The notes under the pieces were generated by a model. The model did not search any database. It saw nothing but the letters and a program-made list of their open reading frames with translations, and was not told where the DNA came from. This document shows positions 3,592-63,747 of a stretch of DNA of 64,000 nt, piece by piece. Positions within the stretch are counted from its first letter, which is position 1; each line of letters starts with the position of its first letter. The stretch spans positions 1 through 64,000 of the IMG/VR virus record IMGVR_UViG_3300028654_000384; one strand, 5' to 3'. The position numbers were made by a program, and so were the translations under genes.

Positions 3592-4050
3592 ATGCAGGTG
3601 ATGACGCTCAGAGAACTGCGGCACCGTCTTACTTTGATGATGGAGGGTGAGGATGTCGGCGCGTTCGATACTGCACGTTTGACGGTGCAATATCGGATTA
3701 TTGACGGCATGCGCATGTTCATTGATGCGCGCTTGAAGCAACCTGATTGGCTCGAGAAAGCAATAGCAGACGTTCGCCCCAAGCGCCCTGCCGTCGAACA
3801 GACTGTTGATCTCCACGGTCACGAGGCATACCTCAATCGCATGGACGCATATTTTCATGGCAAGGGCTACGGTGGTGAAGTGATGATGGCCGTCCTACGC
3901 TTTCTCAAGGATCGCGGGTATGCACGAGCACGTGGGTATATCGAGCACGCCAACATCGCGTCGCAGAGTATGATGAAGAAGGTGGGTGCTAAAGTACAAG
4001 AGCGGCAAGAACACGGCAGTTACTGGTCAATTGATCTGGAGAATGTCTGA
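3592..4050 (+). CDS. GNAT-family acetyltransferase with N-terminal leader
   Basis: FHGKGYGGEVM (motif A) and NIASQSMMKKVG (motif B). Confidence 0.75.
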   Translation: MQVMTLRELRHRLTLMMEGEDVGAFDTARLTVQYRIIDGMRMFIDARLKQPDWLEKAIADVRPKRPAVEQTVDLHGHEAYLNRMDAYFHGKGYGGEVMMAVLRFLKDRGYARARGYIEHANIASQSMMKKVGAKVQERQEHGSYWSIDLENV

Positions 4051-4721
4051 TGTCACGCCTCTTCATCACACCGCGTGAAATCGCCTTCATCAGCGACATC
4101 ACCAAAGAACTTGTGAAAGACGTCATAGGACAGTTCATCTATTACTACGCCATCAATGAGAACAAGACACGCACCGATGTCGTCTACAACGAGGCACTGC
4201 AGAAGGTCTTTGATGCACCGATCAAGCTCGATTGCCTCGTCGACGCCCACTTTCAGGCCGACACCAAGATCAATGAGTTCGGCGTCGATGCACAGTTCAA
4301 GATTGAGGCCTACATTCAGTACCGCGACCTCGTCGACAAGGGCATCAACGTCGCCATCGGAGATTACTTCAGTTTCTCGGACGTCTTTTATGAAGTCACC
4401 GAGAAGGTCTTCATGCGTAACATCTACGGCATGCCCGAGCACAAGGACGGCGTCAAGCTGATCGGTACCAAGGCCCGCGACACGCAGTTCAAGGCCCTGA
4501 CGCTCGGGCCCACCGACATCGCCCGTCCCGAGGCCGACGCGGTGCAGACGACGTTCCATCAACAGCGCGGGCAGGCGACCAATGCCGAGGGCCCGACGGG
4601 CGACCAACGCGACCTGCAGAACCCTGCCGTCGTTGGCACGCCCATCACCGGTGCCAAGGAGGTGTCTCCTAAGGCGGCAGAATTCCCTGGCGATAGTGCC
4701 TTTTATGACGAGAATGACTGA
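4050..4721 (+). CDS. Neck / head-completion protein (gp14-like)
   Basis: ELVKDVIGQFIYYY..., GDYF.F.D.FYEV pattern; stop-start overlap with both neighbours. Confidence 0.7.
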   Translation: MSRLFITPREIAFISDITKELVKDVIGQFIYYYAINENKTRTDVVYNEALQKVFDAPIKLDCLVDAHFQADTKINEFGVDAQFKIEAYIQYRDLVDKGINVAIGDYFSFSDVFYEVTEKVFMRNIYGMPEHKDGVKLIGTKARDTQFKALTLGPTDIARPEADAVQTTFHQQRGQATNAEGPTGDQRDLQNPAVVGTPITGAKEVSPKAAEFPGDSAFYDEND

Positions 4722-5947
4722 TGACGACCCGCTACACCGCTCGCTCTAAATCGCGCTTTCGAGTGCCGGGCCTGCCGTCGGGCTTTGGTACACTGCCAGC
4801 AACGACGAAGGACGGCGTCACTCTGCCCCCGGTGGGCATCGAGGACGTCGACCGTGCCCTGTTCAACCTGTTCAATGCCGAGATCCCGTTCGCCGTCGCG
4901 GGCGACGGCACTGACATCGCCAAGGTGCCCGTCATCATGGCGGCGGGTGAAAAGTGGGCCCTCAACAAGCGCATGCGTGCCGTCCGTGACCGCAACAACG
5001 CGCTGATCCTGCCACTGATCACCATCGTCAGGACGTCGATCGTGCAGGACGTGGGTGCTGACGTGACGGGCCGCGGCATCAACCAGCAGACCGGCGAACT
5101 GGTCATCCAGCGGCGGCTCGATAATTCCGACCGCAGCTACCAGAACCTGGTCAACAACCTGCTCAACACCCACAATCTCGACCTCTGTGAAAACCTGTAC
5201 CCCAACCTCGACAACAACATCTTCGAGACCATCGTCGTCCCGGCACCACAGTTCTTCACCGCACAGTACGATGTCACCCTGTGGACGCAGTACACGCAGC
5301 ACATGAACCAACTGCTCGAGCAGCTGATGGCGTCGTTCCTACCTCAGGGCAACTGCTGGCAGCTCAACACACCGAAAGGCTACTGGTTCATCGCCACCGT
5401 CGATGCCAACACCTATACGTCGGAGACCAACACCGACGACTACTCGCAGGCCGAGCGCATGGTCAGGTACAAGTTTGTCATCAAGGTGCCGGGCTACGTG
5501 CTGGCGACGGGAGTGCCGGGCGCACCCGTTCCCATTAGGCGCTACGTGTCAGCGCCGTCGATTGACTTTGTCGTCGCAGCGTCTAGCGTTAGTGACAACC
5601 TCGATCTGGGTGGTGGTGAGGACTCTGTGGCCGATCCTTTCTTGGGCGCCGATGACCCCACGTTGCCCCTCGATGCGGCGACCAGCAAGCGGCGCGATCA
5701 GCGCTTGACCAACGGCACGCGCCTGTACCCGGGTGCGGACGCCATCACACCTGAGGATCCCGCCTTGACAACGTACCCACGCGGTGTCAAGCCCCCGCGC
5801 TACGTCAAGGTGACGGGCATCGATAGCAACGGCAACACCGTCGTCAAATACGTCAGGGTCAAGACCGTCAATCCGGCAACGGGAGAGATGGTATTAGCCT
5901 CCGATGCGACGTTGGGAGGCCTGTCGATCGTCACTGTCGATGGTTGA
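4721..5947 (+). CDS. Tail terminator / tail completion protein (gp15-like)
   Basis: IEDVDRALF..F, VPVI.A.GEKW, P.F.TA.Y.VTLWTQY..HMNQLLE; lies directly before the sheath gene. Confidence 0.65.
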   Translation: MTTRYTARSKSRFRVPGLPSGFGTLPATTKDGVTLPPVGIEDVDRALFNLFNAEIPFAVAGDGTDIAKVPVIMAAGEKWALNKRMRAVRDRNNALILPLITIVRTSIVQDVGADVTGRGINQQTGELVIQRRLDNSDRSYQNLVNNLLNTHNLDLCENLYPNLDNNIFETIVVPAPQFFTAQYDVTLWTQYTQHMNQLLEQLMASFLPQGNCWQLNTPKGYWFIATVDANTYTSETNTDDYSQAERMVRYKFVIKVPGYVLATGVPGAPVPIRRYVSAPSIDFVVAASSVSDNLDLGGGEDSVADPFLGADDPTLPLDAATSKRRDQRLTNGTRLYPGADAITPEDPALTTYPRGVKPPRYVKVTGIDSNGNTVVKYVRVKTVNPATGEMVLASDATLGGLSIVTVDG

Positions 5948-5991
5948 TGCACCTACCGAACGTCGATCGGGCTTTCACGCTTGTAACCGCA

Positions 5992-6034: not shown

Positions 6035-9000
6035 ATGTCCGCACAAACGTTTCAATCACCCAACTTCTTCGCTCGGGAGATCGATAAGTCTGCACCCGTT
6101 CCACAGGGGCCTGTCGGTGTTCCAGCAGGAGTGATCGGCACTTCTGATAGGGGCCCGGCCTTTGTCCCGGTCACTGTCGGTAATTTCGATCAATTCATCT
6201 CGACGTTTGGTAACCTCGATCCCAATTGCTTTGGGCCCTACGCTGCCTTCTACTTCTTGGCCAACCGCAGCGCGCTGACCTTCATGCGCGTCCTCGGGGC
6301 GGGTGCTAACCAGAGCAGCTCCGACATTACGCGGACGTCGACGACGGGTCGCACCCTGAGCGCCGGCTTTCACCTCGACGGCGTGTCGCCGGCAGTGACG
6401 GGTGACAATCGCCACACGGGCATCGTTCAGTTCATCGTGGGCGTGCACACCCTGCAGCCCAATGAGGCATACGGCGCCGCCATCTTCACCGACAATGATT
6501 CCTTCCACGGTTCGACCGTCCGCCTCGTTCGCGGCATGATCATGACGCCGCAGACGGCTCGCATCATGGTGACCGACGGCAACCACGACTTGTCGGCCGC
6601 TGGGCAGATCAGCAAGTTGGTCGACTTCGGTGACCTGACGAGCACGCCAGGTTACTTCAAGTTGGTCATCAGTTCATCGTTGGGTGCCAGCTTCTACAAC
6701 GACGACGGTAATCCAGGTTGCCGCATCTTGACGGCATCGCTCAATCCTGATGACTCGCGTTACTACGCCAAGTTGTTGAACACCAACCCCGACAGCTTCG
6801 TCCTCTACCAGCACCTGCTCTATGCAGACTTTGCCGTCGACGACGAGATTGCGACGGCCACGGTCGCCGGCATCCTGTCAGGAACTGCCAACACCAGCCT
6901 CAATAACTCCGACACTGCATACGCCGGCGCGCCCTACAACGACAAGTCGACGTACCTGTCATCGTTCGGCGCCTTCGATGCGCGGTTTCAGACGCCGACG
7001 TCGACGTACTTCATCAGTCAACCCTTCGGTAATACCGAGTACGATCTGTTCGCGGTGCAGGCCCTCGATGACGGCGCCTTCGCCAGCGACCTGTACAAGG
7101 TGTCGATCGCCAACGTGCAGGCATCGACCAACCCCGCCTATGCATATGGCACCTTTTCGCTGCAGGTTCGTCAGTTCAATGACACCGACGTCAATCCCAT
7201 CATCCTGGAGCAGTTCAATCACCTGTCGCTCGATCCCACCGCGGACAACTACATTGCCGCCGTCATCGGCGACCGCCGCGTCACCTTCAATTTTGACTCC
7301 ACGTTGCAGGAGGATCGCAGGGTCATCACCAGCGGAAAATACCCGAACAACTCGACCACGATCCGCGTGGTGATGAATGACTCCGTCAACAAGGGACTGA
7401 TCCCGGCGATGGCACTGCCCTTTGGTTTCCGGGGCGCGCTGGTGCCCAAGACCAACGACACGCTGACGGACAACGCCTTCCAGGCGACCAACACCGTCCG
7501 CATCAACGGCATCTTGACGGGCAGCAACTTCGGGCAGCAGGCCCTCAGCGGTGCCATCGTGCCGCCCGTTCCCTACCGCAGCAAGGTGACGAAGGGTGCA
7601 CGGCCCTCGCCGCAGCTGTGGTTGGGCCAACCAGGCCCGGCCGAGCTGTCGAGCCCGCTGTACTACTGGGGTACGCAGTTCGAGCGCCTTGACATACCGC
7701 TCGATCCGAACAATGAATCCATTCCCAACCCGTTGATCGCGTCCTACTCGCAGTTCTTGGGCATCGCCGCCCTCGACAACCTGGTCACCGGGTCAGGTGC
7801 TGACACCCTCAACAACGACAAGTTCAGCCTCAAGAAGGTTGCCTTCTCTAACCTCAGCATCAATGACCTGACGGCGTCGATCGACACTCACATGCGAGAG
7901 GCGGCTTACATCCGCAACGGTCGCAACGACGGCGCGCAGTACACTATCAACGACGGCGTCCTGGGCAGTAGGATCACCCTCGCGACGCTGTTGGCCAAGG
8001 GCACCGCACAGCAGTTCAATCGCTTTTCGCCCTACTTGAAGTTCACCAACTTCCTGCAGGGGGGCTGGGACGGCGTCAACATCCTCGATCCCAATGCCAA
8101 GCGGCTCAATGATCGATCGACCAGCTTCGATGCCGGTGGGCAAGCGGCCGCAGGCTTCATCAGCCCGGGTTTCACCGCACTGAATCAGGCGGGCTCGGGC
8201 CAGAACAACTCGGCGGTGCAGTCGTACCTCACTGCCATCAACGTGATGACGGATCCCATGCAGGCCAACCACAACATTCTGGTGATACCCGGCATTCGTG
8301 AACCCTTCATCACCGATTATGCTGGGACGGCGATCCGCAACTACGGCCTGGCCTACTACATCATGGACCTGCAGAAGTTCGATGAATTCAGCACTCGCTT
8401 GTTCAACGACTCGACGGGATCAGCAGGTGGTCCGGCACGGCCCGACGTGCAGCAGACGGCGACGGGTCTCAACACTCGCGCCCTCGACAACAACTACGTG
8501 GGTACCTACTTCCCCGACGTCATTGTCACCGATAAGTTCAACAACCGTCGGGTCAAGGTGCCGTCGTCAGTCGCCGCACTGGGGGCACTGGCCTTCAATG
8601 ACCGCGTCGGCTACCCGTGGTTCGCTCCGGCGGGCTTCAATCGTGCCGCACTCGACTTCGTCAACAATGTCGAGGTGAGGTTGAATGCGTCGGACAAGGA
8701 CGTGCTGTACAGCAGCAGGATCAATCCGATTGCATCGTTCCCTCGACAGGGGTTCGTCATCTTCGGTCAGAAGACGCTGCAACAGTCAGCATCGGCTCTC
8801 GACCGTGTCAATGTCAGGCGCCTGTTGCTCGAGGTCAAGCGCGTCATCGTCGGCATCGCCATGAAGTTGGAGTTCGAGAACAACACTCCCGACGTGTGGA
8901 ATAAGTTCACGTCGCAGGCGGTGTTGCAGTTGGGCCTGATTCAGGCGGCAGCGGGCATCGAGGCCTTCCAGGTCGTCATGAATGAGACCAATAATTCAGG

Positions 9001-9115
9001 TGATGATCGTGACCAGAACAAGCTGAACGGCAGAATCGTAGTTGTGCCCACGCGCGTGATTGAATTCATCGCGTTGGATTTCATTATCACGAATTCCGGC
9101 GTTCAATTCGTCTAA
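6035..9115 (+). CDS. Tail sheath protein 1
   Basis: SPNFFAREID, GTSDRGPAFVP, PWFAPAGFNR, GQKTLQ...SALDRVNVRRLL, FENN and IEFIALDF sheath motifs. Confidence 0.92.
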   Translation: MSAQTFQSPNFFAREIDKSAPVPQGPVGVPAGVIGTSDRGPAFVPVTVGNFDQFISTFGNLDPNCFGPYAAFYFLANRSALTFMRVLGAGANQSSSDITRTSTTGRTLSAGFHLDGVSPAVTGDNRHTGIVQFIVGVHTLQPNEAYGAAIFTDNDSFHGSTVRLVRGMIMTPQTARIMVTDGNHDLSAAGQISKLVDFGDLTSTPGYFKLVISSSLGASFYNDDGNPGCRILTASLNPDDSRYYAKLLNTNPDSFVLYQHLLYADFAVDDEIATATVAGILSGTANTSLNNSDTAYAGAPYNDKSTYLSSFGAFDARFQTPTSTYFISQPFGNTEYDLFAVQALDDGAFASDLYKVSIANVQASTNPAYAYGTFSLQVRQFNDTDVNPIILEQFNHLSLDPTADNYIAAVIGDRRVTFNFDSTLQEDRRVITSGKYPNNSTTIRVVMNDSVNKGLIPAMALPFGFRGALVPKTNDTLTDNAFQATNTVRINGILTGSNFGQQALSGAIVPPVPYRSKVTKGARPSPQLWLGQPGPAELSSPLYYWGTQFERLDIPLDPNNESIPNPLIASYSQFLGIAALDNLVTGSGADTLNNDKFSLKKVAFSNLSINDLTASIDTHMREAAYIRNGRNDGAQYTINDGVLGSRITLATLLAKGTAQQFNRFSPYLKFTNFLQGGWDGVNILDPNAKRLNDRSTSFDAGGQAAAGFISPGFTALNQAGSGQNNSAVQSYLTAINVMTDPMQANHNILVIPGIREPFITDYAGTAIRNYGLAYYIMDLQKFDEFSTRLFNDSTGSAGGPARPDVQQTATGLNTRALDNNYVGTYFPDVIVTDKFNNRRVKVPSSVAALGALAFNDRVGYPWFAPAGFNRAALDFVNNVEVRLNASDKDVLYSSRINPIASFPRQGFVIFGQKTLQQSASALDRVNVRRLLLEVKRVIVGIAMKLEFENNTPDVWNKFTSQAVLQLGLIQAAAGIEAFQVVMNETNNSGDDRDQNKLNGRIVVVPTRVIEFIALDFIITNSGVQFV

Positions 9116-9150: not shown

Positions 9151-9876
9151 ATGTTCATCATTTACAAGCACACTAACCGTTCCAACGGAAAGGTCTATGT
9201 TGGATACACTAAGTTTACACTTGATGAACGATGGAAACAGCATTGTAAAGATGCTCGACTAGGCAGTGACTTTGCTTTTCATCGGGCGATCCGCAAGCAC
9301 GGGTTAGATGTTTGGGATCACTGTGTCATCGAAGAGTGTATTGACCTCTCCGAAGAGCAGGTCGGAGCACGTGAGATGTATTGGATAGCCGAACTTGCAG
9401 CAACGACTGACAAGCATGGTTACAACATGACGCATGGTGGGTTAAGTCGTCTCACGGTGTGGACCGAAGAGATGCGAGAGTTTCACAGGGTTAGAACCAG
9501 TGAAGGTACCAAGTTGGCGTTTCAGGATCCTGAGATTAAGAAGCGTCACCAGGTAGCAACAAAGATCGCTAGCAATAAGCCTGAAAATCGGAAGCGCAAT
9601 AGTGATGCACAGAAGATTGCTCAGAACAAGCCTGATACCAAAGTTAAGCACGCAGCTTCAATAAAACGCGCGTGGGAAAATGAGCTTCCTACGTTGATTG
9701 CACGGAGAAAACTCATTGAGCAGCTTGATTTGGTCACGAAGGTTGTAATTGCTACGTTTAGATCAGCGCGCGAGGCAGCACGTGAATTAGGACTTAGTCA
9801 AGGTAGCATCTCTAACGTTGCACGTGGTTTGACTAAGTCTGCTGGTGGTTTTGGCTGGCGCTACGTCGTCGCTTAA
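9151..9876 (+). mobile_element. Free-standing GIY-YIG homing endonuclease with C-terminal NUMOD1-type HTH
   Basis: IIYKHTN..NGKVYVGYT...RW..H, YNMT.GG, FRSAREAARELGL..ISNVARG; visibly AT-richer than flanks; TATGAT 5 nt before the ATG. Confidence 0.88.
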
Positions 9877-9962: not shown

Positions 9963-12900
9963 ATGGCGCAACTTAAGTTCGGTTCTGCAGGTGTCTCGAC
10001 GACGGAGATTGACCTCTCACAGCCCACTTCACAGCAGCCTGTCGGAGTACCCGCCGGCATCATCGGCACCGCGCTGAAGGGCCCCGCCTTCGTGCCCATT
10101 ACCGTCGGAGTGATCGACGACTTCTACGCCAAGTTCGGTCTCACTGACGGCAAAAAATTCGGGCCCATCGCCGTCTCCGAATGGCTCCGCAATGCAGGCG
10201 CCGTCACTTACCTTAGGGTCCTCGGAGTTGGCGACGGCACCACGCGCCAGACCAACGGCGACGTCAACTCGGCAGGCTTCACCGTCGGTGAACAGCAACC
10301 CAACGCGACCAACGCAGGCAGCCTGGGTTCCAATCCCTACTCCAACGTCGGCGGTGCCCTGGGTCGCACCTACTTCTTGGGCGCCTTCATGGCCGAGACG
10401 TCGGGTTCCACGTTGTTCAGCCAGGCCGGCATCAATGCTGACGTCGCGGCCTTCACCGCGGCCCCCATCGTCCGCGGCGTGCTGATGGCCACGTCGGGCG
10501 TCATCCTGACGCTGTCGTCGTCGGTGTCAGGCGTCAACAGTGCCCCTGCCTCGAACACTGCGGTGGCCACCGATGCCGTAGGCTCGCCCCTCGGCGACGT
10601 CGTCTTGATGACCAGCGGCATTGCCCGTCAGGACTTCGTGCTGCTGATCAACGGCCTGACCAACACCAATCCGCTGTTCCCGAATGTCATCACCGCATCG
10701 TTCGACATGACGGCACCCAACTACTTTGGCAACGTCCTCAACACTAACCCGCTCAACCTGTCGCAGGCCGGTTACTGCCTCTACGCAGGTTGGGACATTC
10801 ACCCGTCGACGGCCGTCGTCACCGGGTCAGGCATCGTGTCGACCAAGTACGGTGCAGGGGCGGCCACGGTCTTTGCCGCCGGCATCGAGCCTTCGGCCTT
10901 CTTGTTGACGAGTTCGCTGGCACGTGACACGGGTAACTCACAGGTGCCTGATTACGAGGACTTCCGCGATCGTTTTAGTCACGCGCGCAGCTCGTGGGTC
11001 GTCAGCCAGCCCTTCGGCGGCCAGCCTCACAACCTGTTCCGCGTCCATGCCCTCGACGACGGCCACTACGCCTCTACTCTCTACAAGCTGTCGATCGAAA
11101 ATCTGGCTTATTCGTCGGATCCCACCAACCTGTACGGTAGCTTTGACCTCGTCCTACGCCAGTGGGGCGACAATGACCTGGCACCCACCTACATTGAACA
11201 GTGGCGTGGCCTGTCGCTCAATCCGTCTGACTCACGCTACATTGCGCAGGTCATCGGTGACATGAATGCCTACTTTGACTTCGATCGTGGGCCCACCGCA
11301 CAGAAGCTCGTCATCAATGGCAACTATCCGAACGCGTCCAACTACGTCCGCATTGAGATGGATGCCAACGTCGACGCCGGTGAAGTCGATCCGACGGCGC
11401 TGCCCGTCGGCATCCGTGGCGCCCGCCACCTCATCACTGCGGGGTCAGGCACCCTGGCCGCGCCGACCAATCGCATCGTGTCGGGTAGCAACAATGAACT
11501 GTTGATCAGCTCGACCGTTGCCTTTGCGTCGACGGTCGAGCCGCCGGTGCCGATGCGACAGAACTTGACGCAGGGGTCGGGCGCCAAGTTGCAGGTGCAG
11601 CCGCTGTTGTACTGGGGCGTGCAGTTTGAACACGTGCCCGCCGTCGCCACGCCCAATGCGACGTCGCAGCCCAACAATTCATTGAAGTCGTTCGCCAAGT
11701 TCTTCCCCGAGATGAGGACGGACATTCAGAACTTCCGGGTGGGTGATAACCCGGGTGCAGTCACCAGCGCCGGCGCCGTCGTCGACGCCGACAAGTTCAA
11801 TCTCAACATGTTCACCCTGATGAACGTGCAGGTCGTCACCAACTCGGCGGGCACCGCCGATCCCAACCAGTGGGTCAATGCAACCTACGTCCGCAATGGC
11901 AACATTGTTACCAACAACGTCGCGGCAACGCGGGCCTTGCTGACGACGGACTTCATTCAGGCCAACCGCCGCTTCTTGAAGTGGTCGTTCTTCATGCAGG
12001 GTGGTTTCAGCGGCGTCAACATCTTTGACAACGACGAGGCGACACTCTCTAACGCCGCCGTCGAGGCCGACATGAATGCGACCAACCGCGGCTTCAACGT
12101 GGGCCCGACAGTGTCGGCCTACGCCAAGGCTTTGCAGGTGATGGGCGACGTCGCCGGCGTCGACATCGAGCTGTTGGCCGTCCCGGGCATCAGGCACCCC
12201 GTCGTCACCGACAATGCGATCGCGACGGTTGAGCAGCGCTTTGACGCCCTGTTCATCATGGACATTGAACAGTACGATGTCAGCAATCAGGCAGTGACGT
12301 CGGACAGCCAGCAACCGTCGGTGACGCTGACGGCGGCCAACTTCGCCTCCCGTGCCGTCAACAGCAGCTTCGGTGCCGCCTACTTCCCCGACGTGGTGAT
12401 GCCCGATCCCAACACCGGCACCAACCTGTACGTGCCGCCGTCGGTCGCCGTCCTGGGAGCACTGGCCCTCAACGATGCAGTGGGTCACCCGTGGTTCGCT
12501 CCGGCGGGTTTCACTCGCGGAGCGCTGCAGACGACGCTTGAGGCCCGTGTCAAGCTGTCGAAGACCAACATGGACGTTCTGTACGATGTCAACGTCAATC
12601 CGATCGTTGCCTTCCCGGGCAACGCGACGGGGGGTACCAACCCGAAGGGTGGAGTGGTCGTATGGGGTCAGAAGACTTTGCAACAGGCGGCATCGGCCCT
12701 CGACCGCGTCAACGTTCGTCGCCTGCTGATTGAGATCAGGCGGCAGGTCAGGGACATCTCCAACACTGTCATATTTGAGCCCAACCGCGACGCTACGTTG
12801 GCGGCTTTCTCGGCCGCCGTCACTCCGGTCCTTCAAAGGATCCAGGCACAGGCAGGTCTCGAGCGCTTCAAGGTCGTCATCGACAGCAGCACCACGTCTC

Positions 12901-13013
12901 AGCTCGATGTAGAAAATAACACAATTCGTGGAAAAGTGTTTGTCATCCCGACGAAGAGCATCGAGTATGTTAGCATTGACTTCATCGTGACCAACGCGCT
13001 CAACCAACAGTAA
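9963..13013 (+). CDS. Tail sheath protein 2
   Basis: SAGVSTTEID, GTALKGPAFVP, PWFAPAGFTRG, WGQKTLQQAASALDRVNVRRLL, FEPN and IEYVSIDF motifs. Confidence 0.92.
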   Translation: MAQLKFGSAGVSTTEIDLSQPTSQQPVGVPAGIIGTALKGPAFVPITVGVIDDFYAKFGLTDGKKFGPIAVSEWLRNAGAVTYLRVLGVGDGTTRQTNGDVNSAGFTVGEQQPNATNAGSLGSNPYSNVGGALGRTYFLGAFMAETSGSTLFSQAGINADVAAFTAAPIVRGVLMATSGVILTLSSSVSGVNSAPASNTAVATDAVGSPLGDVVLMTSGIARQDFVLLINGLTNTNPLFPNVITASFDMTAPNYFGNVLNTNPLNLSQAGYCLYAGWDIHPSTAVVTGSGIVSTKYGAGAATVFAAGIEPSAFLLTSSLARDTGNSQVPDYEDFRDRFSHARSSWVVSQPFGGQPHNLFRVHALDDGHYASTLYKLSIENLAYSSDPTNLYGSFDLVLRQWGDNDLAPTYIEQWRGLSLNPSDSRYIAQVIGDMNAYFDFDRGPTAQKLVINGNYPNASNYVRIEMDANVDAGEVDPTALPVGIRGARHLITAGSGTLAAPTNRIVSGSNNELLISSTVAFASTVEPPVPMRQNLTQGSGAKLQVQPLLYWGVQFEHVPAVATPNATSQPNNSLKSFAKFFPEMRTDIQNFRVGDNPGAVTSAGAVVDADKFNLNMFTLMNVQVVTNSAGTADPNQWVNATYVRNGNIVTNNVAATRALLTTDFIQANRRFLKWSFFMQGGFSGVNIFDNDEATLSNAAVEADMNATNRGFNVGPTVSAYAKALQVMGDVAGVDIELLAVPGIRHPVVTDNAIATVEQRFDALFIMDIEQYDVSNQAVTSDSQQPSVTLTAANFASRAVNSSFGAAYFPDVVMPDPNTGTNLYVPPSVAVLGALALNDAVGHPWFAPAGFTRGALQTTLEARVKLSKTNMDVLYDVNVNPIVAFPGNATGGTNPKGGVVVWGQKTLQQAASALDRVNVRRLLIEIRRQVRDISNTVIFEPNRDATLAAFSAAVTPVLQRIQAQAGLERFKVVIDSSTTSQLDVENNTIRGKVFVIPTKSIEYVSIDFIVTNALNQQ

Positions 13014-13056: not shown

Positions 13057-13848
13057 ATGTTCATCGTCTACAAGCACATCAATCGAGTCAACGGCAAAGT
13101 GTACATCGGTTACACAGCCAATGGGGTCGATGAACGTTGGCGTGGGCACTGTTATGCCGCTTCTTCAGGTGAGGAGCTCGTGTTTTCGCATGCAATTAGA
13201 AAGTACGGTGTAGATGCCTTTGCACATGATGTGTTAGAGACATGTGCGACAAAGCAACAAGCGTGTGAGGTTGAAATTCGATTGATCGCCGAACACAACA
13301 CCATGGTTCCGCACGGCTATAATATGACACACGGTGGTGAGCGTCGGGTCGGAGAATGGAATCCGATGGCCAAACTCACCGAAGATGATGTCCTTACGAT
13401 CAAGAATACGTGGAACACTCTGCGGCTCGATAATGCGGACGTAATTGGTGACTTCTATCGTCGCTTTGCTCAGAAGTTGAGTGTGACTGCAGACTTGATC
13501 TGTCAAATCATCAAGGGACGATTGTGGTCTCATGTTGGACCTGAACTTGTGAATGTCAACGTGAGTCACCGCGGCAAGGGCAAAGCTGCAGGTGAGAAAA
13601 TGAAGCAACGATGGGCCGACGCGGAGTTCCATGAAGTGCAATCACTCAAGCGCCGCGGCGAAAATAACGGTAGATCAGTGGTGACCGAAGACATTGTCAG
13701 GGCACTGCGCCTTGAGTTCGATCAGCTTGATACGAGCACTAAAGGTGTTACCAAGTCGTTCTGCGTGAAGCATGGTGAACGTCTCGGCGTGACCAGTGAG
13801 AACATCTATGGCATCGTCAAGCGCAAGTCGTGGAAAAACGTCGTCTAA
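13057..13848 (+). mobile_element. Free-standing GIY-YIG homing endonuclease with two HTH-like modules
   Basis: IVYKHIN..NGKVYIGYT, GYNMTHGG, KLTEDDV..I and I.GIVKRKSW; AT-richer than flanks. Confidence 0.88.
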
Positions 13849-13878: not shown

Positions 13879-13910
13879 TGTGCGGGTGCCGACCATACTT
13901 ACTCCTCATG
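13879..13910 (+). promoter_or_regulatory. Late-type promoter block (TACTTA 13896-13901), imperfectly repeated at 18546
   Basis: TGTGCGGGTGCCGACCATACTTACTCCTCATG versus TGTGCGGGTGACGAATACTTACTTTCATCATG. Confidence 0.7.
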
Positions 13911-14195
13911 AAGCTATCGGCACTGCGCCTTGTCGTCCGCGAAGAGTTGTCCCGTCTCAACGAGGTTTCCTTCGCACAGGCGGGTGCCGATCAGCCCCTG
14001 ACGCAGTTCATCAAGCACCTCAACATGGCCAAGGCCGACCTGAATGAGCTGTTTCAACAGACGACTGACACCAAGGCCGGCAATACGGCGACGAAGCTGC
14101 TCAACCAGCTCAACGCCATCATCCTGTCGCTCGACCATGCACCTGAACTGACGAAGAACCCGTTCGCCGACGCGGGACGAAAGGCACGCCGATGA
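13908..14195 (+). CDS. Leader-bearing hypothetical protein (MKLSALRLVVREE)
   Basis: Start reassigned to ATG 13908, just after the late motif. Confidence 0.7.
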   Translation: MKLSALRLVVREELSRLNEVSFAQAGADQPLTQFIKHLNMAKADLNELFQQTTDTKAGNTATKLLNQLNAIILSLDHAPELTKNPFADAGRKARR

Positions 14196-14557
14196 AGCTC
14201 TCACAGAAGCAACTACGACAGATCATCAATGAAGTTGCAGGTCAGAGGATGACCGAGGCCGGCGACGACGGGCGGACGAGTTGGTCACGTGGGTACCGCA
14301 CGGGTGCAAACGAGCCGGACTACGAAGAACTCGGTGGCGCCCTCGCCGGTGCCGTCGTCAACAAGTTGACCAAGAACGTGCAGGATACCATTGACAGGAT
14401 CGTCGAGCACGTGTCGCCCGATGTTGAATTGCCGGCGCGCCTTGAAGACCTCGAAGCTGCAGCCTACGATATCGTCGAAGGGGCGATGCCGATGATCAGG
14501 GACGCGCTTGAGCGGTTGGCCGAGGCGCTGCTACGTAGTCTGATGAACCCCGAGTGA
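14192..14557 (+). CDS. Leader-bearing hypothetical acidic protein (MKLSQKQLRQIINE)
   Basis: ATGA overlap with the upstream gene. Confidence 0.7.
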   Translation: MKLSQKQLRQIINEVAGQRMTEAGDDGRTSWSRGYRTGANEPDYEELGGALAGAVVNKLTKNVQDTIDRIVEHVSPDVELPARLEDLEAAAYDIVEGAMPMIRDALERLAEALLRSLMNPE

Positions 14558-18545: not shown

Positions 18546-18577
18546 TGTGCGGGTGACGAATACTTACTTTCATCATG
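18546..18577 (+). promoter_or_regulatory. Late-type promoter block (TACTTA 18561-18566)
   Basis: Imperfect copy of 13879-13910. Confidence 0.7.
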
Positions 18578-19012
18578 CAGCTCACCGAACGTCACCTCCG
18601 CGACCTCATCGGTCAGGTCATCACTGAAGCCAAGGGCAAGGATCGCGGCGCCGACGCTGCCAAGCAGGTGGCTGATGCTATCAAGGTGCTCATCACGGTG
18701 GGCCCCAAGGTCGAGAAGTACTTTGAGGAGAAGTTGTCTATGATGACGACGATCCCCGCTATGTTCTCTGACGAGCTCGAAGTAGAACATGTTGTCGACA
18801 AACTGCGTAATCTCATTGATAAGGCGGTGGAGCTCGACGATGTCGTGGTGCCTGTATACAAGGCCGCCGCAAAGGCTGCGCCCAAGGCTCCCACCCGCGA
18901 CCGCTCTCGCGGCCGCCTGGCCAACGCCAATCCTACCGCCGACGAGCGTTCACTGGGACTAAACAAGCGTCGTGAAATTCGGCGTCAGGCACGTGAGCGT
19001 GGTCGGACCTAG
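18575..19012 (+). CDS. Leader-bearing protein with a basic C-terminal tail
   Basis: MQLTERHLRDLIGQVITE; Arg-rich end (KRREIRRQARERGRT). Confidence 0.7.
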   Translation: MQLTERHLRDLIGQVITEAKGKDRGADAAKQVADAIKVLITVGPKVEKYFEEKLSMMTTIPAMFSDELEVEHVVDKLRNLIDKAVELDDVVVPVYKAAAKAAPKAPTRDRSRGRLANANPTADERSLGLNKRREIRRQARERGRT

Positions 19013-35383: not shown

Positions 35384-35543
35384 TGACAAGACCTATGCGT
35401 GTCCCAAGTGCGCGGGACCTACCACTAAGTTGAAGGGCTTTGCATGCTACTGGTGCCGACCCTGTGACCACGTCATTGATCTGTGGTATACCGATGATCT
35501 CGTGGTCATTGATGCGTCAAAGTCACCCGTCAAGCCTATTTAG
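35367..35543 (+). CDS. Small Zn-ribbon protein
   Basis: CPKC ... WCRPC. Confidence 0.55.
   Translation: MKQLPDDKTYACPKCAGPTTKLKGFACYWCRPCDHVIDLWYTDDLVVIDASKSPVKPI
35537..35542 (+). promoter_or_regulatory. Late-type promoter variant TATTTA
   Basis: CAAGCCTATTTAGAACATG mirrors CAAGCCTACTTAGATCGTG at 2403. Confidence 0.6.
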
Positions 35544-35546
35544 AAC

Positions 35547-35771
35547 ATGAGCAATTCACTGCTCGAAAAGTACATCAGGTTGATGGTTCAAGAGGCACAT
35601 GATGCCCGGGTACCCAATCAATTGGTCGGTGACTCGGGTGATGAGGGCGAACAGGTTGAAGTGGATGAGGCATCGGTGGTTGGCGGCATAGCAGGCTACA
35701 CTGCACCTCTCGGCATGGATCCAGACAAACTAGGACGTAGGAAGAACGCATCCAAGCGGAAGCGCAAGTAA
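35547..35771 (+). CDS. Leader-bearing small protein (acidic middle, basic tail)
   Basis: MSNSLLEKYIRLMVQE; VDEASVVGGIAGYTAPLG; ends RRKNASKRKRK. Confidence 0.7.
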   Translation: MSNSLLEKYIRLMVQEAHDARVPNQLVGDSGDEGEQVEVDEASVVGGIAGYTAPLGMDPDKLGRRKNASKRKRK

Positions 35772-45863: not shown

Positions 45864-45883
45864 GATACTTATCGCTCAGGAGC
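45864..45883 (+). repeat. 20-nt exact repeat containing late motif and SD (copy 1)
   Basis: GATACTTATCGCTCAGGAGC, identical at 61714-61733. Confidence 0.85.
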
Positions 45884-45889: not shown

Positions 45890-46258
45890 ATGAGGGTCAG
45901 TTACCGCGCACTGAAGAAGATCATCCGTGAAGTGGCGCTGTCGCCCTCCGTCTTCAAGAACAACCACGTGGTGCAGGATCCCATGGATCGGCCCAACATC
46001 GCGCAGGCACTGACGGCGTTGGAGCAGCCCTTCAAGACTGGGTTGGAGACCAACCTCGTCCTCGATGCCCGTGACAGCTACGACGAGGAGACGCGGGAGC
46101 TCGACGATGCCGAATACGCGAGGATCAAGGACGTGGCGGCGAAGGCGACTGAGTTGATGCTGGCTCGCGCCCACAAGGCGGTGCAGGCGTCGTGGGCCGA
46201 GGCGATGAAGGGCGTGGGCAGCGCCGACAAAGCAACCGTACAGAAGAAGGTGGCGTGA
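45890..46258 (+). CDS. Leader-bearing protein (MRVSYRALKKIIRE)
   Basis: Directly after the late motif and SD. Confidence 0.75.
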   Translation: MRVSYRALKKIIREVALSPSVFKNNHVVQDPMDRPNIAQALTALEQPFKTGLETNLVLDARDSYDEETRELDDAEYARIKDVAAKATELMLARAHKAVQASWAEAMKGVGSADKATVQKKVA

Positions 46259-46509
46259 TGGCAAAGGTAATCAAGCTAACGCAGGAGCAGCTCAGGAATC
46301 TCATCAAGGAAGGGATTAGTACCGGCGAAGTGCGTGCAATGACCCATCACCTACAAGACATTAAACGCTCTCTTGGGCGGATGGGTGCTATTCAACAAGG
46401 CATTGGATATGGCAATACGACATCCGAGATCTCCAGTGCACTCGATGCGCTTAAAAGTGCCATCGATGAAGTCGACGAAGTGCTCATTCAGGCACTCGGA
46501 GGTAAGTGA
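46258..46509 (+). CDS. Leader-bearing small protein (MAKVIKLTQEQLRNLIKE)
   Basis: TGATG coupling; AT-richer than neighbours. Confidence 0.7.
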   Translation: MAKVIKLTQEQLRNLIKEGISTGEVRAMTHHLQDIKRSLGRMGAIQQGIGYGNTTSEISSALDALKSAIDEVDEVLIQALGGK

Positions 46510-46853
46510 TGGTAAAGTTGTCAGTGAAACAACTGCGGAATCTCATTCGTGAAGCCGGTGAAGGTCTGAAGACCCCTTCTCGGCACATGAGGTGGGGCAC
46601 ATGGATGGTTGCATGGGGCGTAGCGCTAGCCGATGCAGGTGTCAACCAAGAGGATCTGCCGATCTTCGACGTCGTTGATGAGGACATGGGACAACTTGCT
46701 CTGGAGAAGATGTGGGGCGACTTCTTCGATAAGGGCAAGTCACCTGAAGAAGCCGTAGCACTGGCGATGGATCGTGATGCGTTCGCTGCTGACTATTACG
46801 ATCCCTACATCGACGAATTCACTAGTGAACTTGAACACGCTGGGAGGCTGTGA
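46509..46853 (+). CDS. Leader-bearing acidic protein (MVKLSVKQLRNLIRE)
   Basis: TGATG coupling. Confidence 0.7.
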   Translation: MVKLSVKQLRNLIREAGEGLKTPSRHMRWGTWMVAWGVALADAGVNQEDLPIFDVVDEDMGQLALEKMWGDFFDKGKSPEEAVALAMDRDAFAADYYDPYIDEFTSELEHAGRL

Positions 46854-46857: not shown

Positions 46858-47151
46858 TTGAAATCCACGGTGGGCCAGCTGCGCCGCATCCTCTTTGAAG
46901 AGGCACCTCCGCGCGTGCTGCACGAGGCCTACCTCAACGGCGTGCCCGAGTGGCAGCTCCGCCAAGATACCACCGACTACGTTGACCAGATCCGCGTCCG
47001 CATCAAGCAGTTCATCCTGCTGAACAAGAGCCAGAGCTCGTCAGACCAGCGTGAGGCCATCAACGCCATGAACGACGTCTGTGATGAACTCGAGATGAAA
47101 CTCTATGACCAACTGGAAAATAGTCTCTTCGACTTCACGCGGCGAGTTTGA
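46858..47151 (+). CDS. Leader-bearing protein (MKSTVGQLRRILFEE)
   Basis: TTG start after GGAGG (46843-46847). Confidence 0.65.
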   Translation: MKSTVGQLRRILFEEAPPRVLHEAYLNGVPEWQLRQDTTDYVDQIRVRIKQFILLNKSQSSSDQREAINAMNDVCDELEMKLYDQLENSLFDFTRRV

Positions 47152-61700: not shown

Positions 61701-61713
61701 CCGACGCGTCGCT

Positions 61714-61733
61714 GATACTTATCGCTCAGGAGC
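61714..61733 (+). repeat. 20-nt exact repeat containing late motif and SD (copy 2)
   Basis: Identical to 45864-45883. Confidence 0.85.
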
Positions 61734-61741
61734 CTGTGCGC

Positions 61742-62923
61742 ATGCGATTGAACCTGACTGAGTTGCAGCGAGTCGTGGAGCGAACAATTGACGAAGAGAG
61801 GGCCGTTGATGCCCTGAAGGGTGAAATCCGCCGCGTCTTGGGCCCGGTCGTCATCACTGAGGGTCGGCTAGAACACGTCGTGGCCGAGGCCAATGATCGC
61901 CTCGACGTCCTGCACCGCACGGGCCGCGACGGGCAACTTGACTTTCTCTCCAACATCACCACGACCTTCATCGACCACAAGCACCCCGAGGTTCGACGCT
62001 TTGCGGCGCGCATCATCCCGGAACGTTTCTTGCCCAAGATGGTGACCGACAAGGACGCCGCCGTCCGCGCCGCCGTCGCCATGCGGGTGCCCATGCCCGC
62101 GGTTCGCGAGATGATGAAGCGCTTCAAGCACGACGACCAACTACGTGCCATCTATCGCCAACGCAAGCAGGCGCTGCACGAGGCGGGCATCAGCCCACCC
62201 AAGGCAGAACCCCTGGGCCATGACCCTGTCGACGGTGCAGAGCGAATGGGCGACGTGGCCCGGACGGCCGAAGGCCCCGAATTGAGCGATGCATGGTACG
62301 ACGAACAGGCCCGCCTCTTCATTCACGACTACGCTCGAGCCGAGGCCAATGATCAGCATGCCCGGTTGCTCGATCGGGGGTGGGCATCGCTCGTCGTCCG
62401 CCGCTTCTGTGCCAGCACCAAGGCGACGGCGCACGTTGAGATCGATGCAGAGAAGTTGCTGAAGCACGTCAACGACCTGATGGAAGAGAAGGACGATCGG
62501 ACGCTGGAACGCGACGCGATGAAGGAGACCCTGGCGTGGTTGGGTGCGCAGGACATCAATGAGTCGGCACTGCCTGAATTCCACGAGATCATCGATCCCG
62601 TCCGTGCACTGCTGGAGGCCAACCTGTCGCAGGAACAGTACGTCGCCGAGGCGCTGAAGCTGTTCAACGTCAAGCGGTCGGAGCTGCCCAAGGGCATCCG
62701 CAAGTACTGCCTGGGTGAGGCCAACCTGCGGGTGACGTTGGTGCCGTGCCTGGGTAGCCTGCCGCACCAGCACGGTTTCCGCGCCGTCGACGAGCGTGCC
62801 CTCGACAAGTTCTGTGAGTCGTGGAACGACGGCCAAGCGCTGGTCGGCGAGCCCTTCGTCCTCAACTGGGGACCTCACCAGGGCGATGCATCGAAGGTCA
62901 ACTTTACCGTCACCCTGAAGTAA
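61742..62923 (+). CDS. Leader-bearing protein with HEAT/LRV-like repeats
   Basis: MRLNLTELQRVVERTIDE; HPEVRRFAA and DAAVRAAVA; start reassigned to ATG 61742. Confidence 0.7.
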   Translation: MRLNLTELQRVVERTIDEERAVDALKGEIRRVLGPVVITEGRLEHVVAEANDRLDVLHRTGRDGQLDFLSNITTTFIDHKHPEVRRFAARIIPERFLPKMVTDKDAAVRAAVAMRVPMPAVREMMKRFKHDDQLRAIYRQRKQALHEAGISPPKAEPLGHDPVDGAERMGDVARTAEGPELSDAWYDEQARLFIHDYARAEANDQHARLLDRGWASLVVRRFCASTKATAHVEIDAEKLLKHVNDLMEEKDDRTLERDAMKETLAWLGAQDINESALPEFHEIIDPVRALLEANLSQEQYVAEALKLFNVKRSELPKGIRKYCLGEANLRVTLVPCLGSLPHQHGFRAVDERALDKFCESWNDGQALVGEPFVLNWGPHQGDASKVNFTVTLK

Positions 62924-62932
62924 GATCTTGAG

Positions 62933-63415
62933 ATGCAGACGACGCTCGGCAAGCTGAAGTACGTGATCAGCGAGGTGCTTGAGGCCAACCAGGTGCTCAA
63001 TCGCCTGCGTGCCGTTGCTGCTGGCAAGAAGCCCTACATGGTGGGCCAGTGGGCGACGGTGCCCCGAGATTATTCACAGCCCAGCGTGGGCGTCGCTAGT
63101 TGTTGGGTTGCCGAAGACCCCGAGTTGGGCAAGGTGTACCTGACGTTTAGCTCACACATCACCTACAAGAAGGTCAAGAACAGTCGCCTGCGCGATCCCG
63201 GCGGCACCCGCTATGCCTACACCGCGATCCTGTCGTCGCACCCGTGGGAGACGTTTGAGAACCACGGCAATGTGCCTGTCTTCAAGCTGGCGGCGACGGG
63301 TGAAGGCCGCGAGGACGACAAAGCACTGCAGGCGCGCAAGCAGATGGTGAAGCTGTTCGGCGTCGACCCGATGGCCCACAGGGGCCCACTTGAACCGACG
63401 GAGACACGAAGATGA
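62933..63415 (+). CDS. Leader-bearing hypothetical protein (MQTTLGKLKYVISE)
   Basis: Downstream in the same unit. Confidence 0.7.
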   Translation: MQTTLGKLKYVISEVLEANQVLNRLRAVAAGKKPYMVGQWATVPRDYSQPSVGVASCWVAEDPELGKVYLTFSSHITYKKVKNSRLRDPGGTRYAYTAILSSHPWETFENHGNVPVFKLAATGEGREDDKALQARKQMVKLFGVDPMAHRGPLEPTETRR

Positions 63416-63747
63416 AGACGACAATCAGCAAGCTGAAGCAGTTGATCAACGAGCACCTGTTGGTCGAGGTACCCGTTGGATCCGGCATGCGCAAGCCGCA
63501 GTTCGGCCTGTCGTCGGGAGGCGGTGGTCTCAGGCCCGCCAAGTTCGATCCTGCAGTGCACGATCTCAAGGACGTCATGTGGGCCGTCATGGACGAGTTT
63601 GCGGGCGTTGCCTCTGACCTCGGTGTCGACGACATCAAGGATCCCGCCTTCATCGGTTACATCGGCGATCAGTTGACTGATAAGGGTGTGCCCAACGACA
63701 TCATCCTGCAGGTCAAGGCCAAGCTGCAACGCGGGCAGTCGCGTTAG
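63412..63747 (+). CDS. Leader-bearing hypothetical protein (MKTTISKLKQLINE)
   Basis: ATGA overlap. Confidence 0.7.
   Translation: MKTTISKLKQLINEHLLVEVPVGSGMRKPQFGLSSGGGGLRPAKFDPAVHDLKDVMWAVMDEFAGVASDLGVDDIKDPAFIGYIGDQLTDKGVPNDIILQVKAKLQRGQSR

What the first reader, a model, noticed from the sequence alone, without database searches (positions are those of the whole stretch)
3592..63747. Twelve unrelated proteins share an N-terminal leader ending in Glu: candidate capsid-targeting and processing system
Seen in sequence: the starts are 3592 MQVMTLRELRHRLTLMME, 13908 MKLSALRLVVREE, 14192 MKLSQKQLRQIINE, 18575 MQLTERHLRDLIGQVITE, 35547 MSNSLLEKYIRLMVQE, 45890 MRVSYRALKKIIRE, 46258 MAKVIKLTQEQLRNLIKE, 46509 MVKLSVKQLRNLIRE, 46858 MKSTVGQLRRILFEE, 61742 MRLNLTELQRVVERTIDE, 62933 MQTTLGKLKYVISE and 63412 MKTTISKLKQLINE. 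The shared pattern is roughly L-[RKQE]-x-[LIV]-[IVL]-x-E. The bodies after the Glu show no evident similarity, and every gene lies in a unit headed by a TA(C/T)TTA late-type motif (2409, 13896, 18561, 35537, 45866, 61716). Established: T4 internal proteins carry a 10-aa capsid-targeting sequence (MKTYQEFIAE) removed by the gp21 protease after (I/L)-x-E. Inference: this is a longer amphipathic address tag that loads diverse cargo into the head for injection, genetically coupled to a portable late promoter.
Basis: partly seen in the sequence, partly recalled or inferred. Interest (0 to 1): 0.85.

Follow-up and report, generated by a model that had tools for sequence, protein, structure and literature searches.

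The report
Shared 14-residue leader on phage proteins
An uncultured 359-kb relative of phage T4 puts the same 14-amino-acid tag, ending in a protease-type cut site, on at least 16 otherwise unrelated small proteins; the tag most likely sends them into the forming capsid, which would give a function to many genes that now have none.

Summary
Nine of the 12 listed proteins carry a strict leader, M-[KR]-[LI]-[TS]-x-x-Q-L-[RK]-x-[LI]-[IV]-[RK]-E. It is fixed to residue 1 (9 N-terminal matches against 0.41 expected, P = 6e-10). Two more (18575, 61742) are variants whose Glu lies four residues later. One (3592) is a GNAT acetyltransferase and is not a member.

A model built from the nine finds further leaders that were not used to build it:
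- one just past the window end;
- four in this phage's head module;
- about 35 in 39 related contigs;
- 140 in 76 related head modules, all on the coding strand;
- 28 in 12 kb of another contig.

Conservation stops at the Glu. The bodies are unrelated by BLASTP. Codons differ, and the relatives' GC ranges from 34 to 66%, so the peptide is what is conserved.

The phage encodes a T4-type portal, a gp21-family (S77) prohead protease and a gp23-type capsid protein. The predicted capsid maturation site, QVL[KR]E|, matches the end of the leader. Three conserved small proteins next to the portal and protease carry the leader.

The best explanation (confidence about 0.6) is a T4-style capsid-targeting propeptide, expanded in this clade. 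TAYTTA behaves as the clade's late-promoter-like motif. Packaging, cleavage and injection are not shown.

The parts
13908..14195 (+). Leader gene, 95 aa. Leader MKLSALRLVVRE (13908-13943), two residues shorter than the consensus.
   Evidence: The body has orthologues in L016 and L018, which also carry the leader.
14192..14557 (+). Leader gene, 121 aa. Leader MKLSQKQLRQIINE (14192-14233). This is the best match to the model.
   Evidence: 26 bits. The public gene call starts at 14249 and so drops the leader.
18575..19012 (+). Variant leader gene, 145 aa. MQLTERHLRDLIGQVITE: residues 1-12 fit, and the Glu comes four residues later in V-I-T-E.
   Evidence: 10.7 bits.
35547..35771 (+). Leader gene, 74 aa. 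MSNSLLEKYIRLMVQE (35547-35594).
45890..46258 (+). Leader gene, 122 aa. MRVSYRALKKIIRE. It is the first of a four-gene array directly after the RNR gene.
46258..46509 (+). Leader gene, 83 aa. MAKVIKLTQEQLRNLIKE.
46509..46853 (+). Leader gene, 114 aa. MVKLSVKQLRNLIRE. The body has no relatives in 5.8 billion proteins other than a 99%-identical copy.
46858..47151 (+). Leader gene, 97 aa, TTG start. (M)KSTVGQLRRILFE.
61742..62923 (+). Variant leader gene, 393 aa. MRLNLTELQRVVERTIDE. The protein is conserved in more than 100 relatives, and its N-terminus MRLKLxxLQKVVKxTIDEE is conserved too.
   Evidence: AlphaFold2 model with pLDDT 86 and a helix over residues 5-33. No significant PDB match.
62933..63415 (+). 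Leader gene, 160 aa. MQTTLGKLKYVISE.
63412..63747 (+). Leader gene, 111 aa. MKTTISKLKQLINE.
   Evidence: Orthologues in L022 and L023 keep the leader.
13896..13901 (+). TACTTA late-promoter-like motif, 6 nt before the ATG of 13908.
18561..18566 (+). TACTTA motif, 8 nt before the ATG of 18575. It shares the upstream sequence GTGCGGGTG.CGA with the motif at 13896.
35537..35542 (+). TATTTA motif, 4 nt before the ATG of 35547.
45866..45871 (+). TACTTA motif, 18 nt before 45890. A 20-nt cassette, GATACTTATCGCTCAGGAGC, is shared with the site at 61716.
61716..61721 (+). TACTTA motif, 20 nt before 61742.
2409..2414 (+). TACTTA motif, 4 nt before the neck gene gp13 (2419-3588). It shows that the motif heads structural genes that have no leader.
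3592..4050 (+).
   Evidence: PF13302. No hit from the leader model.

Best explanation
The leader is a clade-specific version of the T4 capsid-targeting propeptide.

Proposed mechanism (inferred):
1. A 14-residue N-terminal peptide forms a short amphipathic helix. Its consensus is M-K-[LI]-T-x-x-Q-L-[RK]-x-[LI]-[IV]-[RK]-E.
2. The helix docks the protein onto the scaffolding core while the prohead assembles.
3. The gp21-family (S77) prohead protease removes it by cutting after the Glu, at the same [ILV][IL][KR]E site that it is predicted to use on the major capsid protein.
4. Core head-assembly proteins next to the portal and protease carry the leader. So do many fast-evolving small proteins of unknown function scattered through the genome. 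These are transcribed from TAYTTA late-type promoters and would be packed into the head. Some may be delivered to the host with the DNA.

Shown here:
- the motif, its fixed N-terminal position and its selection at the peptide level;
- its spread through the clade;
- the T4-type head genes;
- the match to the predicted capsid maturation site;
- its presence on conserved head-module proteins;
- the promoter-like motif.

Inferred: docking, cleavage, encapsidation and ejection.
For: 1. Position and significance. There are 9 strict N-terminal matches against 0.41 expected (P = 6e-10). The anchor Leu is at residue 8 in most of the 45 members.
2. Members not used to build the model. It finds one just past the window end, about 35 in 39 sheath-linked relatives, 28 in 12 kb of L062 and at least 7 in the 484-kb GenBank phage LR756508.1. 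A 36-leader profile finds 965 proteins at E <= 1e-3 among 1.84 billion representatives.
3. Where conservation ends. Information content is 1.5-3.4 bits at the conserved positions of residues 1-14, about 1 bit at 15-16 and about 0 beyond. Forty-five members fall into 36 unrelated body clusters.
4. Peptide-level selection. Synonymous codons differ; identity is 0.38 at third positions against 0.64 at second positions. Relatives range from 34 to 66% GC.
5. T4-type head. The phage encodes Portal_T4, Peptidase_S77 (30% identical to T4 gp21, E = 6e-23) and Gp23.
6. Match to the capsid site. Aligned to the T4 gp23 cut at E65|A66, the capsid protein gives QVLRE|V. The site QVL[KR]E is invariant in 59 relatives. 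It equals the P4-P1 residues (the last four before the cut) of the leader.
7. Head-module proteins. Four head-module proteins of this phage carry the leader. Across 76 related head modules there are 140 hits, all on the protease strand and none on the other. They are concentrated in three syntenic families that flank the portal and protease.
8. Promoter-like motif. TAYTTA precedes head, neck and tail-fibre genes and the leader units, but no replication gene. It is conserved upstream of a head gene in 39 of 44 relatives.
9. Precedent. T4 internal proteins have 10-19-residue propeptides that act as capsid-targeting sequences; targeting and processing determinants were mapped on the 10-residue IPIII peptide, and gp21 cuts after L/I-x-E (PMC9026906). 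T-even phages have more than 30 internal-protein variants, at loci with promoter cassettes (PMC2839356). T4 gp24, gp22 and gp21 start MAKINELLRE, MLKEQLIAE and MNEPQLLIE.
Against: - There is no virion proteome or N-terminal sequence for any member, because the clade is uncultured.
- The leader model does not detect the T4 targeting sequences. The relation to T4 is by analogy and shared cleavage logic, not by demonstrable homology.
- The bodies are mostly acidic (pI 4-6), whereas the T4 internal proteins are described as highly basic (PMC8442874).
- Weak conservation continues two residues past the Glu, and further in some paralogue sets (EE[LA]xRL). In the one confident model the leader is part of a long continuous helix, residues 5-33.
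- Arrays of 28 leader genes imply an unusually large internal proteome.
- Many metagenomic ORFs hold a second, internal copy that keeps the Met. The model does not explain this.
- A protein on a contig that looks cellular has eight motif-like repeats, so the motif is not exclusive to phages.
Confidence: 0.6

Rival explanations
1. The leader is a scaffold-assembly and degradation motif only. Every protein carrying it is a transient part of the prohead core, is cut by the protease and is expelled before DNA packaging. None of it is cargo kept for delivery.
For: Three conserved head-module families in the positions of T4 core and scaffold genes carry it. In T4, most core-protein fragments and removed propeptides leave the head (PMC9026906). 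Acidic bodies would fit poorly next to packed DNA.
Against: Most carriers are hypervariable, phage-specific proteins lying outside the head module, in arrays of up to 28. That is not expected of structural scaffold parts. T4 uses the same kind of peptide for proteins that stay in the head.
Confidence: 0.15
2. The leader is a docking helix for a common cytoplasmic partner, such as a chaperone, another protease, an N-terminal processing enzyme or a host target. It has no role in the virion.
For: The leader genes 45890-47151 and 61742-63747 lie among nucleotide-metabolism and methylase genes. The helix continues past the Glu in some members. Internal copies exist. A peptide deformylase gene sits next to the leader-bearing head genes.
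Against: The peptide is fixed to residue 1 and ends in the protease-type site that matches the capsid maturation site. It sits on conserved head-module proteins. The leader units embedded in replication regions have the same upstream motif as structural genes.
Confidence: 0.12
3. The leader loads proteins into the tail or baseplate lumen, as N-terminal packing signals do in extracellular contractile injection systems.
For: In many relatives the leader arrays lie directly after the second sheath gene, within the tail module. This phage has two giant sheath paralogues.
Against: The conserved carriers flank the portal, protease and capsid genes, not tail genes. The terminal Glu fits the head protease. 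In a phage the tube lumen is taken up by the tape-measure protein and must pass DNA (established knowledge).
Confidence: 0.05
4. It is one fast-diverging paralogue family, or a recombination cassette, and the N-terminus is kept by descent or gene conversion. Alternatively the conserved thing is an element in the nucleic acid.
For: The genes form tandem arrays. Some phages have paralogue sets with longer shared N-termini (L021 and L053). Two pairs of promoter and 5' regions are near-identical.
Against: Codons are not conserved. The peptide is kept across 34-66% GC. Bodies range from 43 to 393 aa with no detectable similarity. The leader sits on three distinct conserved head families.
Confidence: 0.05

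Closest known systems
[quoted passage not shown]
   Same: Both are short N-terminal peptides within T4's 10-19-residue range. Both start MK, have a hydrophobic pair, and end in hydrophobic-x-Glu, the gp21 cleavage logic. Both are attached to otherwise unrelated small proteins. The genome here has the same head machinery (S77 protease, T4 portal, gp23).
   Different: The consensus here is different and more strongly conserved, at 14 residues. The leader model does not detect T4 ipI, ipII or ipIII. The numbers are far larger: at least 16 in 118 kb here and 28 in 12 kb elsewhere. The cargo is mostly acidic. The genes are scattered through the genome. Nothing has been shown by experiment.
N-terminal propeptides of T4 head proteins cut by gp21 (gp24 MAKINELLRE, gp22 MLKEQLIAE, gp21 MNEPQLLIE, gp23 …FLTE65|A)
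   Same: Same position and same terminal motif. Here, conserved head-module proteins and the predicted capsid site end in [ILV][IL][KR]E.
   Different: In T4 these propeptides share only L/I-x-E. Here a full 14-residue consensus is shared by core and accessory proteins.
Hypervariable internal-protein loci of T-even phages with associated promoter cassettes (Repoila 1994 and Comeau 2007, as cited in PMC2839356)
   Same: Variable cargo genes are preceded by a reusable regulatory element. There are two pairs of near-identical promoter and 5' cassettes in the window.
   Different: The T-even elements are based on early promoters (PMC2839356). Here the motif is TAYTTA, shared with structural genes, and it is not found at the leader arrays of relatives.
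Propeptides of head and ejection proteins in phiKZ-like giant phages such as SPN3US (PMC5694885, PMC7411985, PMC10052503)
   Same: These are giant phages in which a prohead protease processes many head proteins (PMC7411985, PMC10052503); from my own knowledge the cut is after Glu.
N-terminal packing signals of extracellular contractile injection system payloads, and trafficking domains of polymorphic toxins (from my own knowledge, not tested here)
   Same: A conserved N-terminal address is joined to variable cargo, and the genes lie in arrays.
   Different: Those load a tail tube or a secretion system and are not removed by a capsid protease.

Membership tests
T4-type capsid-targeting propeptide / internal proteins | Short peptide (10-19 aa) at the extreme N-terminus | tested here: met
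   Leaders are 12-18 aa. The anchor Leu is at residue 8 in most of the 45 members.
T4-type capsid-targeting propeptide / internal proteins | Ends in the gp21 cleavage consensus (L/I)-x-E | tested here: met
   Position 12 is I or V in 40 of 41 sequences and position 14 is E in 36 of 41. The consensus is from PMC9026906.
T4-type capsid-targeting propeptide / internal proteins | The genome encodes a gp21-family prohead protease and a T4-type head | tested here: met
   Peptidase_S77, Portal_T4 and Gp23 lie on the same 359-kb contig. The protease is 30% identical to T4 gp21, E = 6e-23.
T4-type capsid-targeting propeptide / internal proteins | Sequence similarity to the T4 targeting sequence | tested here: not met
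   The leader model gives no hit on T4 ipI, ipII or ipIII. Only MK… and the hydrophobic-hydrophobic-x-E end are shared.
T4-type capsid-targeting propeptide / internal proteins | Only the leader is conserved; the mature parts are diverse | tested here: met
   There are 36 body clusters among 45 proteins. Information content drops after residue 14-16.
T4-type capsid-targeting propeptide / internal proteins | The leader is removed by the prohead protease | not testable with these tools
   This needs N-terminal mapping or an in vitro cleavage assay. The only indirect support is the match to the predicted capsid site.
T4-type capsid-targeting propeptide / internal proteins | The proteins are present inside the capsid and ejected on infection | not testable with these tools
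   There is no isolate or proteome. A weak hit to a PA5oct structural protein turned out not to be a leader match.
T4-type late promoter (TATAAATA, gp55-dependent) | A conserved A/T-rich -10-like element upstream of late structural genes | tested here: inconclusive
   TAYTTA is enriched about 30-fold upstream of genes. It precedes head, neck and fibre genes and is conserved in 39 of 44 relatives. The sequence differs from TATAAATA. No transcription start sites are available, and I did not look for a gp55 homologue.

The most novel reading that the evidence does not exclude
A large clade of uncultured T4-related huge phages may use a single 14-residue 'packaging code' to load dozens of hypervariable small proteins per genome into the capsid, from arrays of up to 28 consecutive genes. 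These proteins would form an injectable arsenal, for example against host defences. It would be organised like the polymorphic-toxin loci of bacteria and could be read straight from sequence. In this reading the tag also works as an internal module in multi-unit precursor proteins.
Probability: 0.35. Interest if true: 0.8.

Novelty: new variant of a known kind. Interest (0 to 1): 0.62.

Why it matters
If the tag is a capsid address, a simple sequence rule would assign a cellular location and an expression class to hundreds of proteins of unknown function in huge-phage genomes. At least 965 protein clusters match in public metagenomes.

It would also point to which of those proteins probably act first in the infected cell. 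And it would offer a short portable tag for loading foreign proteins into large capsids, as the T4 targeting sequence already does.

It also shows that the T4 device is much older and more widely used than the few T-even internal proteins suggest. A practical point follows: public gene calls sometimes start downstream of the leader (14192 is called at 14249), which hides the tag.

Tried and rejected
- Megablast of a window gene against 50,697 phage records found nothing. The closest cultured relative by sheath is Microcystis phage Mel-JY01, at 30% identity.
- tblastn with a 27-aa leader against cultured phages found nothing, because the query is too short for that database.
- A two-leader protein gave weak hits to Pseudomonas phage PA5oct 'structural protein'. 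Translating the region showed no leader, so the hits are spurious.
- Homology searches for two cargo proteins found only near-identical copies.
- Pfam and PHROGs gave no function for any cargo or for the small head-module proteins. PHROG 7338, of unknown function, matches the leader region only.
- The 90-aa leader-bearing head protein (call it p90) shows no similarity to T4 gp67.
- The top repeat-rich hit, P0123, lies on a contig that looks cellular. I excluded it as evidence about phages.
- The fold of the 393-aa member has no significant PDB match.
- The window has no tRNA and no Rfam family.
- No paper in the library holds the peptide strings, and none links capsid-targeting sequences to metagenomic huge phages.
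- I considered a ribbon-helix-helix N-terminus. I rejected it because no second conserved helix follows the leader.
- I did not run a second structure prediction on a small leader protein. Without a deep alignment it would not have been informative.
Full report
**What the window is**

The window is the first 64 kb of IMG/VR contig 3300028654_000384. The same phage was assembled several times as contigs of about 359.3 kb from soil or rhizosphere metagenomes. It is a huge myovirus distantly related to T4.
- It encodes T4-type neck proteins gp13 and gp15.
- It has two sheath paralogues of about 1,020 aa.
- It has a T4 baseplate protein and a tape-measure-like protein of 1,293 aa.
- Replication genes (RecA, flap endonuclease, DnaB, RNR) lie at 36-46 kb.
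- The closest cultured relative by sheath is only 30% identical.

**The observation**

- Nine fit the strict pattern [LIVM][RKQ]x[LIVM][LIVM]xE a few residues after the start codon. The whole six-frame translation holds only 20 such matches.
- Within called genes there are 9 N-terminal matches and 8 internal ones. The expectation for N-termini is 0.41, giving P = 6e-10.
- 18575 and 61742 fit residues 1-12 and carry their hydrophobic-x-Glu four residues later.
- 3592 is a GNAT acetyltransferase that the leader model does not recognise.

**Anatomy of the leader**

I aligned 45 members from the window and from related contigs. The leader is tied to residue 1:

M1-[KR]2-[LI]3-[TS]4-x-x-Q7-L8-[RK]9-x-[LI]11-[IV]12-[RK]13-E14.

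- Information content is 1.5-3.4 bits at the conserved positions of residues 1-14. It falls to about 1 bit at 15-16 and to zero after that.
- The bodies form 36 BLASTP clusters among 45 proteins. They are 43-209 aa long (393 for the 61742 family), hydrophilic and mostly acidic. None has a Pfam or PHROG function.
- Codons for identical residues differ about half the time. Nucleotide identity is 0.38 at third positions and 0.64 at second positions.
- The same peptide is kept in relatives whose GC ranges from 34 to 66%. Selection therefore acts on the peptide, not on the DNA or RNA.

**Spread of the leader**

A model built from the nine window leaders finds further leaders that were not used to build it.
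- A tenth lies just past the window end: MRTTVKHLRSLIHE.
- About 35 more lie at ORF starts in 39 contigs whose sheath is 45-68% identical. They often form arrays directly after the second sheath gene.
- A profile of 36 leaders finds 965 proteins at E <= 1e-3 among 1.84 billion representatives. The top hits hold two or three copies.
- One phage-like contig has 28 leaders in 12 kb, all on one strand.
- A 484-kb GenBank 'uncultured phage' has at least seven in 8 kb.
- One repeat-rich hit lies on a contig that looks cellular, so the motif is not strictly viral.

**Link to the head**

The window holds no head genes, so I walked upstream on the 359-kb contig. The gene order there is: terminase; 211 aa; 101 aa; T4-type portal with an intein; 288 aa; Peptidase_S77; 126 aa; peptide deformylase; 153 aa; 90 aa; 180 aa; a 698-aa scaffold-like protein; Gp23.

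- The protease is 30% identical to T4 gp21, E = 6e-23.
- Four of the small proteins start with the leader, or carry it within the first 10-25 residues:
  - MIRVSVERLRRLIKEE (101 aa);
  - MALSRSELKSVIKEL (153 aa);
  - …KIGLLRLRHLINEE (211 aa);
  - …VKLTPALLKRIIEEE (90 aa).
- In 76 related head modules (protease 65-79% identical) there are 140 N-terminal leader hits. All are on the protease strand and none on the opposite strand.
- Of these, 124 fall in three syntenic families: 42 between the terminase and the portal, and 31 and 51 in two families just after the protease.
- These families occupy the positions of the T4 core and scaffold genes. They show no sequence similarity to gp67.

**Match to the capsid maturation site**

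T4 gp23 loses 65 residues (PMC9026906), and its sequence reads …FLTE65|AEIGG. Aligned to it, this phage's capsid protein gives …QVLRE60|VGNS. Across 59 relatives the site QVL[KR]E is invariant. This is the same [ILV][IL][KR]E that ends the leader. It is more specific than the general T4 rule L/I-x-E.

**The upstream motif**

- TACTTA is the most enriched hexamer in the 45 nt before genes: 7 of 74 genes against 0.23 expected.
- Motifs close to a gene start precede gp13, a patatin-like gene, a 94-aa gene on the minus strand and five leader units.
- Elsewhere on the contig they precede the gene before the terminase, the 288-aa and 90-aa head genes, the scaffold-like gene, a 175-aa gene and the 2,512-aa tail-fibre-like gene.
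- None precedes a replication gene.
- The motif is conserved 20-30 nt upstream of the 90-aa head gene in 39 of 44 relatives.
- Five of the eight motif-proximal genes in the window are leader genes (Fisher P = 0.0013).
- The leader arrays of relatives mostly lack the motif. The coupling to a 'portable promoter' is therefore a feature of this phage, not of the clade.

**Interpretation**

The published T4 facts are these.
- Internal proteins carry 10-19-residue N-terminal propeptides that target them to the scaffolding core.
- On the 10-residue IPIII peptide, residues 4 and 7 matter for targeting and residues 8 and 10 for processing.
- gp21 cuts after L/I-x-E (PMC9026906).
- The sequence MKTYQEFIAE can carry foreign proteins into heads (PMC8442874).
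- T-even phages have more than 30 internal-protein variants, at loci with promoter cassettes (PMC2839356).

The leader here has the same position, length class and terminal logic, and sits in a genome with the same head machinery. The most likely reading is a clade-specific, expanded version of that device.

The reading rests on association and analogy. The T4 sequences are not detected by the leader model. No proteome exists. The cargo is acidic. The helix can run on past the Glu. Internal copies that keep a Met are unexplained. I put the explanation at about 0.6. The main rivals are a purely transient scaffold role and a role outside the virion.

**Novelty**

I found no paper that mentions these peptide strings or links capsid-targeting sequences to metagenomic huge phages. 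Pfam has no family for the motif, and one PHROG of unknown function matches it. The principle is known from T4. The consensus, the scale and the clade are new.

Noticed in passing
window 6035-9115 and 9963-13013, with 9151-9876 between: There are two giant tail-sheath paralogues (1,026 and 1,016 aa, both matching PHROG 23 and Phage_sheath_1C). A GIY-YIG homing-endonuclease gene separates them, and a second GIY-YIG gene follows at 13057-13848.
   Followed up: partly
window 14558-16213 (-) and 16883-18538 (+): Two paralogous 551-aa proteins match HNH/homing-endonuclease PHROGs 3339 and 559. They flank the 162-aa tail-tube-like gene (16337-16825) in divergent orientation.
   Followed up: no
window 2409, 13896, 18561, 35537 and 21139 (-): At five genes TAYTTA ends only 4-8 nt before the start codon and there is no Shine-Dalgarno sequence. 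At the other genes it lies 18-28 nt upstream with a GGAG between. If the motif is a -10-like element, the first group would give leaderless mRNAs.
   Followed up: partly
window 13870-13901 vs 18536-18566, and 45860-45885 vs 61710-61735: There are two pairs of near-identical promoter and 5' cassettes: GTGCGGGTG.CGA..ATACTTACT, and GATACTTATCGCTCAGGAGC. Each pair heads different leader units.
   Followed up: partly
L058:10381-10875 (same phage, head module): A peptide deformylase gene sits inside the head module, between the S77 protease and the leader-bearing 153-aa and 90-aa genes. It is present at that place in 25 of 76 relatives.
   Followed up: no
L058:5020-8463 and L058:1145-3985: The portal gene (1,147 aa) carries intein and HNH domains. 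The large terminase is unusually long, at 946 aa.
   Followed up: no
P0118-P0267 (metagenomic proteins); L062:10001-10450: Many ORFs contain two or three leader copies. The internal copies keep the Met (…ENKMKITKSQLRRIIKEE…) and no stop codon intervenes. They could be fused units, precursor proteins or internal starts.
   Followed up: partly
L062:284-11636: A 43-kb phage-like contig (GC 39%) has 28 consecutive leader hits in 12 kb. Almost every gene in that stretch starts MKITKRQLRRIIRE.
   Followed up: partly
L061:10001-12883 (P0123): A 960-aa protein with eight internal LTxxxLRxIIxEEL repeats lies among housekeeping genes (a tRNA synthetase, CTP synthase, guanylate kinase). Motif-like repeats therefore also occur in what looks like a cellular genome.
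   Followed up: partly
window 14192-14557: The public gene call for this ORF starts at 14249 (102 aa) and omits the leader. Automated start choice can hide the tag.
   Followed up: yes
window 597-1466 and 3592-4050: A patatin-like phospholipase, headed by TACTTA, and a GNAT acetyltransferase, between gp13 and a gp14-position gene, sit inside the structural gene block.
   Followed up: no
window 34000-40000: GC drops to 0.48-0.53 here, against about 0.58 elsewhere. Two stretches (35772-36233 and 35384-35546) have no called gene. No tRNA or Rfam match was found.
   Followed up: partly
window 31795-33009: A 404-aa ORF with a DNA_pol_A Pfam hit directly follows the large baseplate-region genes. A DnaE-type polymerase (1,178 aa) lies 6 kb past the window end (L001:16619-20155).
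   Followed up: no
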